From: Phyllobates terribilis
Taxonomy: Eukaryota
Length of the DNA: 64,000 nucleotides
NCBI RefSeq assembly: GCF_046119375.1
Contig: NW_027366100.1
Span: 1-64,000, forward strand
Direction of reading: 5' to 3'
Positions 30,754 through 46,031 of this stretch are shown here, piece by piece. Every line of letters starts with the position of its first letter. Position 1 is the stretch's first letter. A program made the translations under genes and the position numbers. A model generated the notes under the pieces. It worked only from the letters and a program-made list of their open reading frames with translations. It was not told where the DNA came from and ran no database searches.

Positions 30754-33171
30754 ATGAAATGGGAAGAAGATTATGGGACGGAGGGAGTAAGTAACTTAAA
30801 ACACTAAAAAGTAACTACTAATTAATTATTAAATTTATACTTTAAATTGTTTAATATGTGATTTTAGATACACATTAAAAAAATTGTATTTATATATTCC
30901 TAAAATTCCTTTTGAGTATATAATTTTTATAGATTTATGCTTATTTTGTTTTTTATTATTTGTGATTGTGGTTATAATTATCTTATGGTGGTTTTTTATG
31001 AAGTAATTTCAATAAAAAACTATATATATATATAATATTAAAGGAATATGGAAAAACAGTCTTAGAATCGTTTTTATCACATGTCGCTCTTAAAATAAAA
31101 GTTGAAATTTTTGCCAAGTGTCATTTTAGAGCTTTCTACTCATCAGTCACGTAGGACCCTGTAATCAATTTAATTTTCATTTTTTTCTTTAAATACTTCG
31201 TAAATGTGTAAAAGGAGAGTTAATGATTTTGAAATAATCTCTAAAATTGAAAAATTAAGATTTCTTTTAAAAAAAGAAATGTCTCAAAAAAACTTATAAT
31301 TTTTTAATCTTCCAAAAGAAGCATCCCTAAAACATCATTCATTTAAGTAATCATGAAAAATGAAATTTTGTTGATATTATTCTCAAAATTTTAAAAATTG
31401 AAGTTTAGTTTTTTCCAAATTAAAAAATCCAATTACACAAATTCGTAATAAATATGTTATATTTTTATTAGTATCTTTTATATATATTTAAAAACTATAA
31501 TATATTAATAATTATTTTTTAAATATAAAATTATGATAAATCGCGTGCATGAGCGCGATATAAACTAGTTTAAATTAAAACTGGTTTGTTAAAATTAAAA
31601 TTATTTTCTATTTCCGGTAGGAGGGAGTAGTAGCTTAATTAACGTATTAGAAATGCCCATAAATCGAGGAGTGTAAGGGACATAATGGTGAATTGAGGAA
31701 AGCAGTACCCTGGAAAGAAGGAAAGTCGGAGGGGATGCTTATTAATGAAGGGAAGTTTGGAATGGTCAAAGTGTCAAACACGTCATTAACGCTTCAGTGG
31801 TGAGAAGGGGTAAGTTACGTATTAGCCCTTGAATCGCGTAATGAAAGATAATAAAGGGAGTGGCTAACTGTCAGATTATAGTGTGGTTGCGGCGCCGCGT
31901 GATGACTGGTAGGATTTAAGTGAGGGAGGTTCGACGAAGTTACCGTTGCGAGGGTATATAATGTTTGTCGTCATCTGGGCCTCTACAGACCGTTGCTTCG
32001 CGGGCCCAATTCACATCATTTAAGCCCATCAGTCAGGGCATCAAATCACGTTTACATGAAGATACATAAACTACTTTTTTTTCTTAGGGTGTTTTTTAAC
32101 TATCCCTTATACACTTTTCGAACAAGTAATTATCTCCATACTTTAAGAAACTGATTATTTGACCCCCTTTATATCAAAATCCTAAAATTATCACCTATGT
32201 ACCACAATTTATTGTCATCGATAAATAGTTTTCCAAATTTTATTGTCATCAACCCAATTTATTGTCAGCAACACTAAAATTTATTGTCAGCAACAAATAA
32301 TTTTCTAAATTTTATTATCATCAACACAATTTATTGTCATCAACACTAAAATTTATTGTCAGCAACAAATAATCTTCCAAATTTTATTGTCATCAACACA
32401 ATTTATTGTCATAAACATTAAATTTTATTGTCAAAACAAATAATTTTCTAAATTTTATTGTCATCAATACAATTTATTGTTATAAACACACAAATTTATT
32501 GTCATCATCACTTAAATTTATTGTCACTAAGAAATGATTTTCAAAATTTTATTGTCATCAACACAACTTATTGTCACCATCACTAAAATTTATTGTCAGT
32601 AACAAATAATTTTCCAAATTTTATTGTCATCAACAATAAAATTTATTGTCAGCAACAAATAATTTTCTAAATTTTATTGTCATCAACACAATTTATTGTC
32701 ATCAACACTTAAATTTATTGTCAGCAACAAATGATTTTCCAAAATTTATTGTCATCAACACTAAAATTTATTGTCAGTAACAAATAATTTTCTAAATTTT
32801 ATTGTCATCAACATAAAATTTATTGCCAGCAAAAAATAATCTTCCAAATTTTATTGTCATCAACAAAATTTATTGTCATCAACACTTAAATTTTATTGTC
32901 AGCAACAAATAATTTTCCAAATTTTATTGTCATCAACACAATTTATTGTCATCAACACTAAAATTTATTGTCAAAAATAAATAATTTTCTAAATTTTGTT
33001 GTCATCAACACAATTTATTGACATCAACACTAAAATTTATTGTCAGCAACAAATAATCTTCCAAATTTTATTGTCATTAACACAATCGGCGTTTTTGCTA
33101 TATAGACCAGAAGCATAGATGAAACTAGGTAACTAACCTCCGTTTAGAAGTTTGCAAAACTAACCTCGTGA

Positions 33172-34195
33172 AGACACTTTCATGTGATGACACTTTCATG
33201 TGATGACAGTTTCATGTAATGACACTTTTTAGTGATGACACTTTTTCATGTGATGACACTTTTTCATGTGATGACACTTTCATGTGATGACACTTTTTAG
33301 TGATGACACTTTCATGTGATGACACTTTTTAGTGATGACACTTTTTAGTGATGACACTTTTTCATGTGATGACAGTTTCATGTGATGACACTTTTTTAGT
33401 GATGAGACTTTATTATGTGATGACGGTTTCTTTCATGTGATGACAGTTTCATGTGATAACACTTTTTAGTGATGACACTTTTTCATGTGATGACAGTTTC
33501 ATGTGATGAAACTTTTTAGTGATGGCAATTTTTCATGTGATGACACCTTCATGTGATGACAGTTTCATGTGATGACACTTTTTAGTGATGACATTTTTTC
33601 ATGTGATGACAGTTCCATGTGATGACACTTTCATGTGATGACACTTTTTAGTGATGACACTTTTTCAGTGATGACGCTTTTTGCAGTGATGACACTTTTT
33701 TACTATCATGTGATGACACTGTCATGTGATGACACTTTCAGGTGATGACAGTTTCATGTGATGACAATTTCATGTGATGACAGTTTTATGTGATGACAGT
33801 GTCACGTGATGACACTTTTTAATGATGACACTTTCAGATAATGACACTTTTTAGTGATGACACTTTCAAGTGATGACACTTTAATGTAATGACACTTTTT
33901 AGTGATGACAATGATAAGGTGATGACACTTTTTTAGTGATATTTTTAGTGATGAAGCTTTTGAAGCGATGACAATTTCTAAACATAAAAAGATTGTCATC
34001 AACCTTAAAAATAGAGTCATTAACCTTGAAAAAGTGTCATTAAACTTGAAAATAGTGTCATCAATCTTGAAAAAATTGTCATCAAATTTGAAAAAGTGTC
34101 ACCAAGCTTGAAAACATTGTCATCAACCTTGAAAATAGTGTCATCAATCTTTAAAAAATGTGATCAAGCTTATAAATAGTGTGATCAACCTTTAA
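33172..34195. repeat. Subterminal arrays of the Pack-MULE: GTGATGACAC 13-15-mers (33172-33965) and inverted GTCATCAACCTTGAAAA 17-mers (34010-34195)
   Basis: Visible directly in the sequence. Confidence 0.93.
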
Positions 34196-34326
34196 AAAGG
34201 TACAATTAATTACTTACGTCAAATTGCACTTTACAACTCTGCACCACCCCTATCCCGACTTTTCCTTTCATTTACTTGTTTCTTCATATCATCATGTATA
34301 TAAACTAGTAGCTACGCAAGACAAGG

Positions 34327-34832
34327 CTATGGTGTAGAATTTACAGAGATCTCATGAGACATTGAGCTTTGCTGGTCAGCACTGAAAGACTGGATCTTGA
34401 GATGCTGCAATGGCTTTAGAGCAACACAGAGTTGGGCGAATGAAGGACACAAGTTTGGGTCACTGTATAAGAAAGAGTTGAGAATATTAAAAGTGAAACA
34501 AAAGAAAACAAAGGTACAATTAATTACTTACGTCTGCCAGCATTCCCATATTATTCTTGCAACTAATGGATCAATCTCTTTAGGGATCTCAAGGCGTCGG
34601 TCCTGGAAACCAACTGCTCCAACAACTTGCATCGGATTCATTCCACTCCAAGGCTGCCTCAGGGTCGCCAGCTCCCATAATATTAATCCAAAGCTGTAGA
34701 TATCACATCTGACAGTACCCACAACTCATCACATTTTAATGCCACGCATAAAATCATTACAGTAATAAAATATTCAACTCACTTCTCATTGGATGGTTCA
34801 TTGCGAAGTATTTCAGGTGCCATCCACTCAGG
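34327..34832 (-). pseudogene. EDR1: Captured last three exons of an EDR1-like Raf MAPKKK (34832-34783, 34708-34532, 34462-34327)
   Basis: [52 protein letters not shown] and DPNLCPSFAQL...HEISVNSTP-stop, with GT-AG introns retained. Confidence 0.88.
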
Positions 34833-35371
34833 CTAATCAAATTATATACCAGATTAATGACAGCAACAATTTCATACTATCACAGTAACTCCCCCAATTT
34901 CATTCAATTGAAAATGATGACAACAACAATTTCATACTATGATAGTAACTCCCCTAACAAATTCAACTGAAAATCAGCAAACTCAGCTAACAAACTCAGC
35001 AAACTGAAAATCCTGCAAGCTCAACTATCAAATTCAACTAAAAATTCATCGAACTGAAAATTCCAAGCAGTTGAAATTCAGCTGAAAAAATTCCAAGCAA
35101 ACTCAGCTGAAAGAATTATTAACAAACTCAGCTGAAAAGTTTCCAAGCATTTGAAAATTCCAAGAAATCTCACTTGAAAAATTCAGCATAATACAAGGCA
35201 TGACAAACGTGTTCTTAACAGGAGATAATATGAGTTCAAGAGAACTTAGCATTGTGATGGGTTAATTATTTTCTCTTAGGGTTAAGAAATCTATCCATAG
35301 AATGTATCAACAACCTCTACCGAAACAAGAAATGAAATACTGGATGCAGTAGAAACTGAGTTGTAAGTTAC

Positions 35372-36250
35372 CTGCTCAGTCTTCTCCTCAACACCATCGG
35401 AGATGAATTTTTCAGTCTGCACTTAAATTAGACATCCTTGTTATGCACAATTACAAAAGCAGTAATCATTTCAGAAAAGAAATTGACTTGTAAGCATAGT
35501 ACCTCGGGAATAAGACCAAGACAGCCGGAGTAAAGAGCAAGTTGTTAGCTTTGATAGCCTGAGAATAAGGATCCAATGCAGTTGGTGCATTCTCAGTTTG
35601 AATAGCCTCTTTAATGCCTACGTTTCACACAGTTACAACAAATTTCATACTATCACAGTAACTCCCCCAATTTCATTCAATTGAAAATGATGACAGCAAC
35701 AATTTCATTCAATTGAAAACAATTAGAATAACTCATCCAATTTCATTTAGCAAATGCAGTTAAGCGAATGATCTTGCAATTTCAATCAATTGCAAGCGAT
35801 TATAGTAATAAAATGAAATGTGAGTCAAGAGAGAGACGATTGAGGAAGAAGGAACATAGGAAAAAGGGAAGCTAAATTACTAGGCTGAGCGGAGACGCTC
35901 ATGGAAGCGAAGGGGATGGATTTTCAACGAGAAGATGATTGCCAAAACTTGGAACCGACGAAGGAAACGCAGCCAACTCCAGTGAGAACAGGGCCCCTGG
36001 TTCTGACGGAGGCGTCGTCTAAAGCCGGAAAATTGAATGACGCCCTTGCTGCAGTCTATGCCATTGAGACTGTTCGTGCTATATACGGCTACGTCTCCGA
36101 CTCGTGCTATCTACGGCTTCGTCTCCGGCCGGTCGTCTTCGGCTCGTTGTCCTCTCAGCAGAACTCGATCGCCAAAACTTGGAAGCGCCGAAGGAAACAC
36201 AGCCAACTCCAGCGAGAATAGGGCCCCTGGTTCTGACGGAGGCGTCAGCA
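35372..36250 (-). pseudogene. RIDA: Captured exons 1-3 of plastid RidA (YjgF/YER057c/UK114); exon 1 ends 35881, exon 2 35617-35503, exon 3 35416-35372
   Basis: GVGCVSF...PFASMSVSA transit-peptide region, KEAIQTENAPTALDPYSQAIKANNL and TEKFISDGVEEKTEQ. One TGA in exon 1 and a 1-nt deletion in exon 2. A 77-bp part of exon 1 is duplicated (35941-36017 and 36171-36247). Confidence 0.88.
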
Positions 36251-39200
36251 GAGCTCGACCGCCGTCCTCGTTCGTTGTCTGGTGTCTTCAAGCGTGAAGG
36301 GGTGAAGAGTATGCCACTCATCAGCTCTGAGACCCACCGGAAGAAGAGATCGAAACCGTAAGCAACGAAGAGAGTGATGTGAAGCTTTGAAGCTTTCAGA
36401 GAAAGGAGGGAGTCCGTGGCAGGGGAGAAGGGAAGCAAGGGAAAATGAAGAAGAGAGAGAGCGTTTTCAGGATTAGGTTTTTTATATAAGGGTTAGTTTC
36501 TAAAATTAATAAAAATGGAGATTAGTTTGTTAAATAATATAGTAAAAAGAGTTAATTAATGATAATTTTTCTTAACACAATTTATTGTCATAAACATTAA
36601 AATTTATTGTCAGCAACAAATAATTTTCTAATTTTATTGTCATCAACACAATTTATTGTCATAAACACTAAAATTTATTATTAGCAACAAATAATTTTCT
36701 AAATTTTATTGTCAGCAACACAATTTATTGTCATCATTACTTAAATTTATTGTCATCAAGAAATGATTTTCAAAATTTTATTGTCATAAACACAATTTTT
36801 TGTCATCAACACTTAAATTTATTGTCAGCAATAAATAATTTTCTAAATTTTATTGTCATCAACACAACTTATTGTCATCATCTCTAAAATTTATTGTCAG
36901 CAACAAATAATTTTCCAAATTTTATTGTCATCAACACAACTTATTGTCACCAGCACTAAAATTTATTGTCAGCAACAAATAATTTTCCAAATTTTATTGT
37001 CATCAACAATAAAATTTATTGTCAGCAACAAATAATTTTCTAAATTTCATTTTCATCAACACTTAAATTTATTGTCACCAACAAATGATTTTCCAAATTT
37101 TATTGTCATCAACACTAAAATTTATTGTCAGCAACAAATAATTTTCTAAATTTTATTGTCATCAACACTAAAATTTATTGTCAGCGACAAATAATTTTCC
37201 AAATTTTATTATCATCAACACTAAAATTTATTGTCATCAAGAAATAATTTTCAAAATTTTATTGTCATAAATACAATTTATTGTCATCAACACTTAAATT
37301 TATTGTCAGCAAAAAAAAATCCAAATTTTATTGTCATCAACACAATTTATCTTCATCGACATTAAAATTTATTGTCAGCAACAAATAATATTTCAAATTT
37401 TATTGTCATCAACCTAACATTTATTGTCAGCAACAAATAAATTTCCAAATTTTATTGTCATCAACACAATTTATTGTCAGCAACACTAAAATTTATTGTC
37501 AGCAACAAATAATTTTCCAAATTTTATTGTCATCAACACAATTTATCTTCATCGACATTAAAATTTATTGTCAGCAACAAATAATATTTCAAATTTTATT
37601 GTCATCAACCTAACATTTATTGTCAGCAACAAAATAAATTTCCAAATTTTATTGTCATCAACACAATTTATTGTCAGCAACACTAAAATTTATTGTCAGC
37701 AACAAATAATTTTCCAAATTTTATTATCATCAACACAATTTATTGTCATCATCAATTAAATTTATTGTCATCAAGAAATGATTTTCAAAATTTTATTATC
37801 ATCAACACTAAAATTTATTGTCAGCAATAAATTATTTTTCAATTTTTTTATCATCATCACTAAAGTTATTGTCAGCAACAAATAATTTTTCAAATTTTGT
37901 TGTCATCAACATACTTTATTGTCAACACTAAAATTTATTGTTATCAACACAATTTATTGTCATCACTTAAATTTTTTGTCATCATTACTTAAATTTATTG
38001 TCATCAACACTTAACTTTGTTGTCATCAACATGAATGGTGCCAAAAACATTTAGAAATCGAGACATTTAGGTTATGTTATCTTCATCATATTTATTATGT
38101 CTTCAAAAACTCCAATGTGCAAACATCAAAAAAACACTTCTACACAAAATGTACCTCTAGAGAAGAAGTTGTAAACATCTTCAAAAATCTCCCTAGTAGC
38201 CAGGACATTAATAGGACCTGTAAACATCTTCAAAATCTCCCTGCAATAGCAGGCACACTAGATAAACATCCACATGTTCAATTTGCATCAGATCATCAGA
38301 AGTGGAGAGCATATAGTTTAAGACAACCCCCGAGATTTGCCTGGAAGAAAAGAAAAAACATCTCCATCAACAAGGATGCATCTAGATCTGCTCAATCATC
38401 TTCTAGCTACAAATAGTTGTTGTTATAAACAAAATTGAACAAAAACCTAACTAGCCATCGAATCAAAAGAATTGAGAGCGAAAAAATCATTCTCAGCAAG
38501 CTTAGGATGTAATAGCCTATCAATCACTGGTGAATCGATGGAGGAATTGAGCTTGCAGATCGAATCTTCGAGAGCGAGATGACGCTGGCGAGTCGATTGT
38601 TCATCTTTCGACGAATTTGCAGCGAAGGACGCAGCCGAAGGTACTCCCAGATTTGAGCTTGAGTTTACGAGATGATTTTGGCAGAACGGAAGCTTTCCCG
38701 GAAGCGGTGTCCCAGATAGGAGCTTCAAAAGGCATTCCTCTTATTTCCTTCATTCCTCATGTCGGAGGTACTCCACCATGGACGAGATCCACCACAGTCG
38801 ACACTGTCGGCGACAACGGTGATGGCCGAATCTCATTTGTATCCTCAGCGCACAGAGAGAGCGAGGGTTGGGGAGGGAGTAAGAGAGGGAGGAGAAAGAG
38901 CGAAGGTTTGGAGTTGCGTATCTCCGAGCTCATGTCTGGAGACGTGAATCCGACAATTTATGGCTTGCTTCCCACGGTTGTCGCCAAATCTAGGCACTCA
39001 AATTTCCGAACCGGTGACCATTGAATAGCTTAGAAATTGCTTCTGGAGCAGGAGAATCGGCTAGCCCTAAGTGGACAAGGTCTGAAAATGCTAGCGTGGT
39101 TGACTGGGTATCGAATTTGGCTCCCAAGCTCCGGTGAAGGTGAAAACAGGGGGTTGAGGTAGCGTCTCGTGTATGGGCTATGTCTTCTGCTTGTGATGGA

Positions 39201-42810: not shown

Positions 42811-43841
42811 TCGACGAGCAGCGTGGAAAGATACTCGACGAGTAAGACCTACGCAGGATAGGCCGAATCAACGTAGACAGGTCCTCGACGAGCAGGACCT
42901 ACACAGGATGAGCCGGATCGGCGTAGACTGATCCTCGACGAGCAGCTTAGGGAGATACTCGACGAGCAGACAGTCCGTCCCAGAGCCTATCTGATCTTCG
43001 TATCTCTTTGGCCGTCGAGATAATTTCGTATATCTCGAATGATCATCCACAAAAGTAATGTAGTACTTCTTTCCACCTCTAGATTCGGTGTTCCTAAATT
43101 CTGCTAGGTCTGAATGGATCAATTCCAACGGTTCAGTTGTCCTTTCATTGACAGAATTAAAAGCCTTTCTCTTAAATTTGGCCTCTACACATACATTACA
43201 CTTTTTATGATCATATTTAGTCAAGTTCGAAATTAATCCCATTGCATGCATTCGATTAATGGATTTAACATTCACATGTCCTAATCTAGCATGCCATAAA
43301 TCCAAAGATTCAACGATATAAGCAGAAGAACCAATTTCATTGCCAACAACAACATCAGTTTCAAGGAAATACAATAAGTTGTTCCTATATGCCTTTCCTA
43401 GGAAAACACCATTCTTACTTAAAACTATTTTCCCGCATTCAGTTACTTGCTTAATTCCAGCAATCTCAAGCAAAGCACCAGATACTCGACGAGTAGACAG
43501 TCCACATCATCCGGCTTGTTAACCTGACCCCTTAATATATTTGTTATAACTCGACCCGTTCTGACCCGAAAGAATTTGACCTGAAATGACCGATCCGAAA
43601 TAACCCGAACCCGCAACTATGTAACCCGAACCCGACCCGACCGACCCGATTACTACGTCTACTTGAATTGGTGGGTTTTCGGATCGGATTGACGGGATGG
43701 GATAATCTGGCTCACTCCCAAAACACCTTCAACGTGGCCTTTTTATTTAAGTGAAAATTGTTACTACAGACATATACTGTGACAGAACTCACAAGAGTAA
43801 AAAGAGCACATTTCACCCAAAATAAGGAGAGAAATACAGAA
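42809..43841 (-). repeat. Segment X, copy 2
   Basis: About 12 differences from 41293-42324 by eye. Confidence 0.92.
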
Positions 43842-46031
43842 GGGTGTTTTTTTTAACTACCCCTTTTCTACACTTCCAACAACCAATTACCTCCCTAATT
43901 TCAGAAACTAATTATTTGACTCCCTTTCTATCAAAACCCTAAAATTATCACCTATCTACCACAATTTATTGTCATCAACACTCAAATTTATTGTCAGCAA
44001 CACATAATTTTCCAAATTTTATTGTCACCAACACAATTTATTGTCATCAACACTTAAATTTATTGTCAGCAACACATAAACATTCCAAATTTTATTGTCA
44101 TCAACACAATTTATTATCATCAACACTCAAATTTATTGTCAACAACACATAATTTTTCAAATTTTATTGTCATCAACACAATTTATTGTCATCAACATTT
44201 AAATTTATTGTCAGCCACACATAATTTTCCAAATTTTATTGTCACCAACACCAACACAATTTATTGTCATCAACACTTGTCAGCAACACATAATTTCCAA
44301 TTTTATTGTCACCAACACAATTTATTGTCATCAACACTCAAATTTATTGTCAACAACACATAATTTTCCAAATTTTATTGTCACCAAACCAATTTATTGT
44401 CATCAACACTTAAATTTATTGTCAGCAACACATAACATTCCAAATTTTATTGTCATCAACACAATTTATTATCATCAACACTCAAATTTATTGTCAACAA
44501 CACTTAATATTCCAATTTTTATTGTCATCAACACAATTTATTGTCAGCAACACATAATTTTCCAAATTTTATTGTCACCAACACAATTTATTGTCATCAA
44601 CACTCAAATTTAATCTTTGGTTTCAGTTACTCGTTAGCCATTTTAGCAAAATCAGCTTTTGACATCTATCATAGACACTCGACGAGCAGTAGACACTCGA
44701 CGAGTAGTGGGTTAAAAACTTAGGGTTTATCTCTGACGAGCAGATAAGATACTCGACGAGTAGTAGACACTCGACGAGCAGTAGACACTTGACGAGTAGT
44801 GGGTTAAAACTTAGGGTTTATCTCGACGAGCAGTGAAGATACTCGACGAGTAGTAGACACTCGACGAGCAGTAGACACTCGACGAGTAGTGGGTTTATCT
44901 CGACGAGCAGTGAAGACACTCGACGAGTAGTAGACACTCGAGGATCAGTAGATACTCAACGAGTAGAGCGGAAGACAATGGTAGTGGGTTTAGGGTTTAA
45001 CTCGACGAGCAGAGAGGACACTCGACGAGCAGAGAGGACAATCGACGAGCAGTAGACACTCGACGAGCAGCAGACACTCGACGAGCAGTAGATATTCGAC
45101 GAGTAGAGCGGAAGACAATGGTAGTGGGTTTAGGGTTTAACTCGACGAGCAGAGAGGACACTCGACGAGCTGTAGACAATGTAAGGCTGATACAGGTCCG
45201 AGGTCTGTATCGATTGGCTCTGATACCATGAAAAGAGAAGATGGAAATGTAATTGTGTGTGTTTATTCATGGAGGAGACCTCAATACATACAAGTTATAC
45301 AAGTGTGAATGAGATATCTTCCTAGAAGATATCTCATTCAAAAAAATCCAAATTTTATTGTCAGCAACTTAAATTTATTGTCAGCAAAAAAAATCCAAAT
45401 TTATTGTCATCAACATAATTTATCTTCATCAACATTAAAATTTTATTGTCAGCAACAAATAATATTTCAAATTTTATTGTCATCAACCTAACATTTATTA
45501 TCAGCAACAATTAAATTTCCAAATTTTATTGTCATCAACACAATTTATTGTCAACAACACTAAAATTTATTGTCAGCAACAAATAATTTTCCAAATTTTA
45601 TTGTTATCAACACAATTTATTTTCATCATCACTTAATTTATTGTCATCAAGAAATGATTTTCAAAATTTTATTATCATCAACACTAAAATTTATTGTCAG
45701 CAATAAATAATTTTTTCAAATTTTGTTATCATTATCACTAAAATTTATTGTCAGCAATAAATATTTTTTAATTTTTGTTGTCATCAACACACTTTATTGT
45801 CAACACTAAAATTTATTGTTATAAACACAATTTATTGTCATCACTTAAATTTATTGTCATTATTACTTAAATTTATTGTCATCAACACTATAACTTTATT
45901 GTTATCAACATGAATGGTGCCAAAAACATTTAGAAATCGAGACATTTAGGTTGTGTTATCTTCATCATATTTATTATGTCTTCAAAACTCCACTGTGCAA
46001 ACATCAAAAAACACTTCTACACAAAATGTAC
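43842..46031. mobile_element. Second, truncated and composite copy of the array-bearing MULE
   Basis: The left end is about 80% similar to 32087. Arrays lie at 43960-44610 and 45340-45910. The segment 45340-46031 closely matches 37300-38150. Confidence 0.8.
44611..45340 (-). mobile_element. Copia 5' fragment: partial LTR, Met-PBS and a repeat-rich 5' UTR
   Basis: GGCTCTGATACCA at about 45217-45229 followed by TGAAAAG. 18-bp GACACTCGACGAGCAGTA repeats with embedded TTTAGGG. Confidence 0.7.

What the first reader, a model, noticed from the sequence alone, without database searches (positions are those of the whole stretch)
33087..36572. Pack-MULE that assembles a phase-compatible RidA-EDR1 chimeric gene
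RidA exons 1-3 (transit peptide plus N-terminal half) are followed on the same strand by the last three EDR1 exons with their natural stop. RidA exon 3 ends in phase 0 and the first EDR1 exon starts in phase 0 (CCT GAG = PE), with intact GT and AG. One splice would therefore join them in frame. The only lesions seen are a TGA (probably from CGA) and a 1-nt deletion. Younger copies could encode a plastid-targeted hybrid, and transcripts or siRNAs could act on a defence kinase and a metabolite-repair gene (inference).
Basis: partly seen in the sequence, partly recalled or inferred. Interest (0 to 1): 0.78.

Follow-up and report, generated by a model that had tools for sequence, protein, structure and literature searches.

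The report
Decayed gene-carrying Mutator-like transposon (RidA + EDR1)
A 3.5-kb plant DNA transposon really does carry the front half of a RidA gene and the tail of an EDR1-type kinase gene on one strand. This copy is broken by two stop codons and a frameshift, so it is an ordinary dead gene-capture of a well-known kind.

Summary
Window 33087-36572 (minus strand) is a discrete insertion with an exact 9-bp target-site duplication (TAACACAAT on the + strand) inside a 72-bp tandem array. Removing the element and one duplicate restores the array in register.

It carries RidA exons 1-3, with boundaries identical to exons 1-3 of the six-exon spinach RidA gene. It also carries the last three exons of an EDR1-like Raf kinase, with that family's usual C-terminus.

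Also missed were an 87-nt duplicate of exon 1, decay at conserved RidA residues, and very weak terminal inverted repeats.

Best reading: a non-autonomous, Pack-MULE-type transduplicate assembled in several capture steps, now a pseudogene. Even an intact version would lack the RidA active-site half and the kinase catalytic lobe.

The scan noted another Pack-MULE in this genome (s1-215496), but not this chimera. About 1 kb of the element is arrays of a GTGTCATCA motif, and the core TGTCATCA is shared with the host array.

The parts
33087..36572 (-). Whole inserted element (3486 bp), non-autonomous, no transposase domain
   Evidence: Bounded by the TSD. No Pfam domain other than the RidA and kinase pieces. 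No other homologous DNA in the window.
33078..33086 (.). Target-site duplication, copy 1 (TAACACAAT on + strand)
36573..36581 (.). Target-site duplication, copy 2 (TAACACAAT on + strand)
36453..36572 (-). 5' terminal AT-rich region. Weak TIR block AACTAATCTCCATTT...AACTAACC starts 45 nt from the end. The region is collinear with the left end of the array-bearing host element family.
33087..33167 (-). 3' terminal region. The matching TIR block AACTAACCTCCGTTT starts 44 nt from the end.
36065..36452 (-). CT-rich leader of unknown origin. Contains an 87-nt second copy of part of RidA exon 1 (36160-36246, 90% identical) and a 28-bp repeat (36074-36127).
   Evidence: No protein relatives found for its 137-codon open frame.
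35881..36064 (-). RidA exon 1 (transit peptide). Lesions: TAG at 36058-36056 and TGA at 35926-35924.
35503..35617 (-). RidA exon 2. One base is lost in the codon at 35530-35531. Changes at conserved positions: K>N, A>T, and G>D in GPYSQ.
35372..35416 (-). RidA exon 3, ending in phase 0 (..TEQ|gt). Changes at conserved positions: G>E and Q>K.
35641..35713 (-). 73-nt backbone repeat (contains TGTCATCA), about 24 nt upstream of the RidA exon 2 acceptor
34868..34940 (-). Second copy (96% identical) of the 73-nt backbone repeat, about 35 nt upstream of the first kinase exon
34783..34832 (-). EDR1-like kinase exon (PEWMAPE...), starting in phase 0 after ag
34532..34708 (-). EDR1-like kinase exon (subdomains IX-XI). 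No change at any of 33 conserved positions.
34327..34462 (-). Last EDR1-like exon with the family's usual C-terminus and TAG stop. R>C at 34449-34447 in DPNLRPSF.
33987..34197 (-). 21-bp array, about 10 copies, with the motif in the opposite orientation to the next array
33168..33931 (-). 16-bp array, about 47 copies, of GTGTCATCAC(A/T)..AAA. Motif spacing is 16 nt in 21 intervals.
32206..38032 (+). Host 72-bp tandem array (motif TTGTCATCA) that the element interrupts. Part of a repeat-bearing element family with a second copy at 43841-46031.

Best explanation
This is a non-autonomous DNA transposon of the Pack-MULE type, that is, a transduplicate. Its backbone consists of weak terminal repeats and arrays of a GTGTCATCA motif. 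At the DNA level, with introns kept, it acquired pieces of a RidA gene and an EDR1-like Raf kinase gene. It then transposed into a 72-bp tandem array, making a 9-bp target-site duplication.

The captures were probably stepwise, with at least three pieces: the RidA 5' end with exon 1, RidA exons 2-3, and the kinase tail. The same motif-bearing 73-nt backbone repeat sits just upstream of two of these pieces. Exon 1 is partly duplicated. A 21-nt exact repeat of the kinase intron start recurs at the end of the captured tail. These are footprints expected from template switching during repair or replication (inference).

The copy in the window is a pseudogene with two stops, one frameshift and changes at invariant residues. 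It makes no functional protein. Shown here: the insertion, the TSD, fragment identities, exon structure, phases and lesions. Inferred: MULE superfamily membership, the order of captures, and silencing.
For: - The TSD is exact, unique to the two flanks, and restores the array in register. Nine bp lies within the 8-11 bp given for MULEs, and a GC-poor TSD is typical (PMC5861414).
- Neither the open frames of 40-60 codons or more on either strand of the element nor the exon pieces match a transposase or any Pfam domain other than the RidA and kinase pieces.
- RidA exon boundaries are identical to exons 1-3 of the six-exon spinach gene. Intron 2 is of similar size, 86 versus 75 nt.
- The kinase tail matches EDR1-like fragments at up to 92% identity and shares their C-terminal end.
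- Decay: TAG at the Trp codon, a TGA and a 1-nt deletion. Five of 35 positions that are at least 95% conserved in 115-118 plant RidAs are changed to residues never seen in that panel. The conserved Arg of DPNLRPSF is changed to Cys.
- Internal repeats mark the capture joints.
- Weak TIR block at equal offsets; 1 of 500 shuffles scored as high.
- Pack-MULEs that carry fragments of several genes, mostly as pseudogenes, are well documented (PMC13317346 and the references it cites).
Against: - The terminal inverted repeats are very poor, and the outermost bases are not inverted.
- No autonomous MULE or sister copy was available to tie the ends to a Mutator family.
- The parent loci were not found, so DNA-level capture from two unlinked genes of this genome is inferred from structure only.
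- The kinase exon is much better preserved than the RidA exons (0 of 33 versus 5 of 35 conserved positions changed). A single simultaneous capture does not explain this.
Confidence: 0.8

Rival explanations
1. The element, or younger sister copies, is transcribed from its end. The transcript is spliced from the RidA exon 3 donor (35372) to the kinase acceptor (34832). The RNA, or 21-24-nt siRNAs made from it, modulates the parent RidA or EDR1 genes.
For: - All donors and acceptors are intact, and the phases are compatible in an undamaged version.
- MULE ends can act as promoters (PMC5861414).
- Captured fragments in maize TEs are reported as siRNA reservoirs that affect donor genes (PMC13317346).
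- Downstream of the kinase stop, the opposed motif arrays would fold into a long imperfect hairpin if transcribed (-164 kcal/mol, z -7.1).
Against:
- The copy is decayed, so divergence from the parents may be too high for action in trans.
- The element sits in a repeat-rich, retrotransposon-rich region that is likely silenced.
- No sister copies are known.
Confidence: 0.12
2. The element belongs to another class of gene-capturing element (hAT, CACTA, Helitron or an unknown type), or is a non-transposon rearrangement, and is not a Mutator-like element.
For: The TIRs are nearly absent and the outermost bases are not inverted repeats. No Mutator transposase relative could be linked to it.
Against: - A 9-bp TSD (10 bp cannot be excluded) is not expected for CACTA or PIF (3 bp), hAT (8 bp) or Helitrons (none). 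These values are from my own knowledge.
- The ends are not CACTA, and not the TC...CTRR of Helitrons.
- The clean in-register empty site argues for transposition and against rearrangement.
- MULEs lacking clear TIRs (VANDAL type) are known, and earlier notes report motif-array MULEs in this genome.
Confidence: 0.07
3. This copy encodes a working plastid-targeted RidA-kinase hybrid protein.
For: Only the compatible splice phases.
Against: - Stops at codons 3 and 47 and a frameshift in exon 2.
- RidA exons 4-6 are absent.
- The kinase N-lobe and catalytic loop are absent; the match covers only profile positions 186-242 of 258.
Confidence: 0.01

Closest known systems
Rice, maize and Arabidopsis Pack-MULEs (Jiang et al. 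2004; Juretic et al. 2005; Hanada et al. 2009, as cited in PMC13317346; Zhao et al. 2018, PMC5861414)
   Same: - A non-autonomous element with a 9-bp TSD.
- Intron-containing fragments of more than one host gene on one strand, giving a potential chimeric reading frame.
- The GC-rich 5' end of a gene was captured.
- Mostly pseudogenised.
   Different: - TIRs are barely recognisable here, whereas classic Pack-MULEs have long, similar TIRs.
- About 1 kb of the element is short-motif arrays.
- Copy number, parent loci and expression are unknown.
Tgm-Express CACTA elements of soybean (Zabala and Vodkin 2007, PMC1947982)
   Same: A DNA transposon that carries fragments of several host genes, whose exons can be spliced into novel combinations.
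   Different: CACTA elements have CACTA termini and 3-bp TSDs (own knowledge). This element has a 9-bp TSD and no CACTA ends. Splicing is shown for Tgm-Express and untested here.
VANDAL-type MULEs with VANC target-motif arrays (PMC5735166, PMC10398659)
   Same: A Mutator-like element with weak or absent TIRs whose non-coding DNA is packed with tandem copies of one short motif. Earlier notes on this genome describe similar arrays (s1-198887, s1-220962).
   Different: No VANC-like gene or transposase lies in this element. Binding and anti-silencing are untested. The resemblance is a lead only.
Pack-TIRs formed by gap filling or replication-fork switching (Tan et al. 2021, PMC8277862)
   Same: Short repeats at the capture joints (73-nt, 87-nt and 21-nt repeats) fit template-switch models of capture.
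   Different: That study is on animals. The mechanism here is inferred from footprints only.

Membership tests
Pack-MULE (gene-carrying non-autonomous Mutator-like element) | Target-site duplication of 8-11 bp | tested here: met
   An exact 9-bp duplication, unique to the two flanks, that restores the array in register. The size range is from PMC5861414.
Pack-MULE (gene-carrying non-autonomous Mutator-like element) | Long terminal inverted repeats of a Mutator family | tested here: inconclusive
   Only a 37-nt block of about 73% identity at offsets 45 and 44 (1 of 500 shuffles scored as high). The outermost bases are not inverted.
Pack-MULE (gene-carrying non-autonomous Mutator-like element) | Internal region made of host gene fragments, with no transposase | tested here: met
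   RidA exons 1-3 and EDR1-like last three exons with their introns. No other Pfam domain in the frames scanned.
Pack-MULE (gene-carrying non-autonomous Mutator-like element) | Parent genes exist elsewhere in the same genome at unlinked loci | not testable with these tools
   No tool searches this plant genome. There is no homologous DNA elsewhere in the window. The metagenome scans were blank.
Pack-MULE (gene-carrying non-autonomous Mutator-like element) | Ends shared with an autonomous MULE that encodes a MURA-type transposase | not testable with these tools
   The large ORFs scanned in the window (10 of 14 of at least 150 aa) gave retrotransposon domains, a PP2C exon, or in one case no match; none gave a MURA-type transposase.
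RidA / YjgF / Ribonuc_L-PSP (PF01042) | Sequence match and the plant RidA gene's exon structure | tested here: met
   5hp7 at E 6e-8. Pfam E 0.004, below the curated cut-off because only 37 residues were scanned. Exon boundaries equal spinach exons 1-3.
RidA / YjgF / Ribonuc_L-PSP (PF01042) | Complete domain of about 120 residues, including the C-terminal half | tested here: not met
   Exons 4-6 are absent. Only profile positions 1-23 of 121 are matched in exon 2. It is a fragment, not a member protein.
EDR1-like Raf-type MAPKKK | Kinase C-lobe and C-terminal tail of the EDR1 group | tested here: met
   Up to 92% identity to short plant fragments, three of them named EDR1-like by NCBI. CTR1 is a more distant match in the same exon. 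The C-terminus ...EISVNSTP is shared with homologue P0059, and P0020 and P0067 end ...VNYTP.
EDR1-like Raf-type MAPKKK | Complete catalytic domain (ATP-binding lobe, catalytic loop, DFG) | tested here: not met
   The fragment starts at PEWMAPE. The Pfam match covers profile positions 186-242 of 258.
VANC-type anti-silencing system of VANDAL MULEs | Arrays of one short motif in the element's non-coding DNA | tested here: met
   36 of the 38 minus-strand TGTCATCA copies in the element lie in the 16-bp array, mostly 16 nt apart. A 21-bp array holds the motif in the opposite orientation.
VANC-type anti-silencing system of VANDAL MULEs | A VANC-like protein that binds the motif | not tested
   No such gene lies in the element. 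A trans-acting partner elsewhere in the genome could not be sought.

The most novel reading that the evidence does not exclude
The element belongs to a Mutator-like lineage whose backbone is defined by arrays of a GTGTCATCA motif. It has landed inside the array of a sister family that uses the variant TTGTCATCA, and its 5' end is collinear with that family's left end. This could mean that one motif-binding factor (a transposase or a VANC-like protein) recognises both families and guides integration into motif arrays. In that case the captured RidA and EDR1 pieces would be passengers on a motif-targeted vehicle. If the element is transcribed, the opposed arrays downstream of the kinase tail would form a hairpin that could seed siRNAs spreading into the EDR1 fragment.
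Probability: 0.08. Interest if true: 0.5.

Novelty: new member of a known kind. Interest (0 to 1): 0.2.

Why it matters
Gene capture by Mutator-like elements is a known route to exon shuffling and to siRNA cross-talk with parent genes. This is one more example, and a clean one: its limits are proven by an in-register empty site, and its joints keep repeat footprints that bear on how captures happen.

It would matter more if intact, expressed sister copies existed, or if small RNAs from it acted on EDR1, a regulator of plant disease resistance. Nothing here shows either. As it stands it is a dead capture of annotation value only.

Tried and rejected
- **Run search closed:** There is no transcript, junction or small-RNA test.
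- **137-codon leader frame:** the word search gave no relatives.
- **Kinase exon word search:** found only fragments at 92% identity or less, so neither the parent nor a sister copy.
- **RidA exon 2 representative search, then a word search seeded with an Oldenlandia RidA:** gave about 120 plant RidAs. The closest transit peptides (Spinacia, Amaranthus, Chenopodium, Ancistrocladus) are only 56% identical. Spinach exons are only about 77% identical in DNA. The species and the parent stay unknown.
- **Exact-product look-ups:** two window ORFs are not on record.
- **Metagenome scans:** two scans, for the array 26-mer and for a RidA exon 26-mer, were blank.
- **Homology inside the window:** nothing else in the window is homologous to the element.
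- **Host element's other end:** no inverted partner was found for the left end of the host array element, so the host element stays unclassified.
- **Other scans:** Rfam gave nothing. The last kinase exon alone gave no significant PDB match.
- **Earlier-findings index:** look-ups by sequence were blank.
- **Helitron and CACTA readings:** rejected on the element's ends and its TSD.
- **Joined spliced model:** All searches were run exon by exon, by reference.

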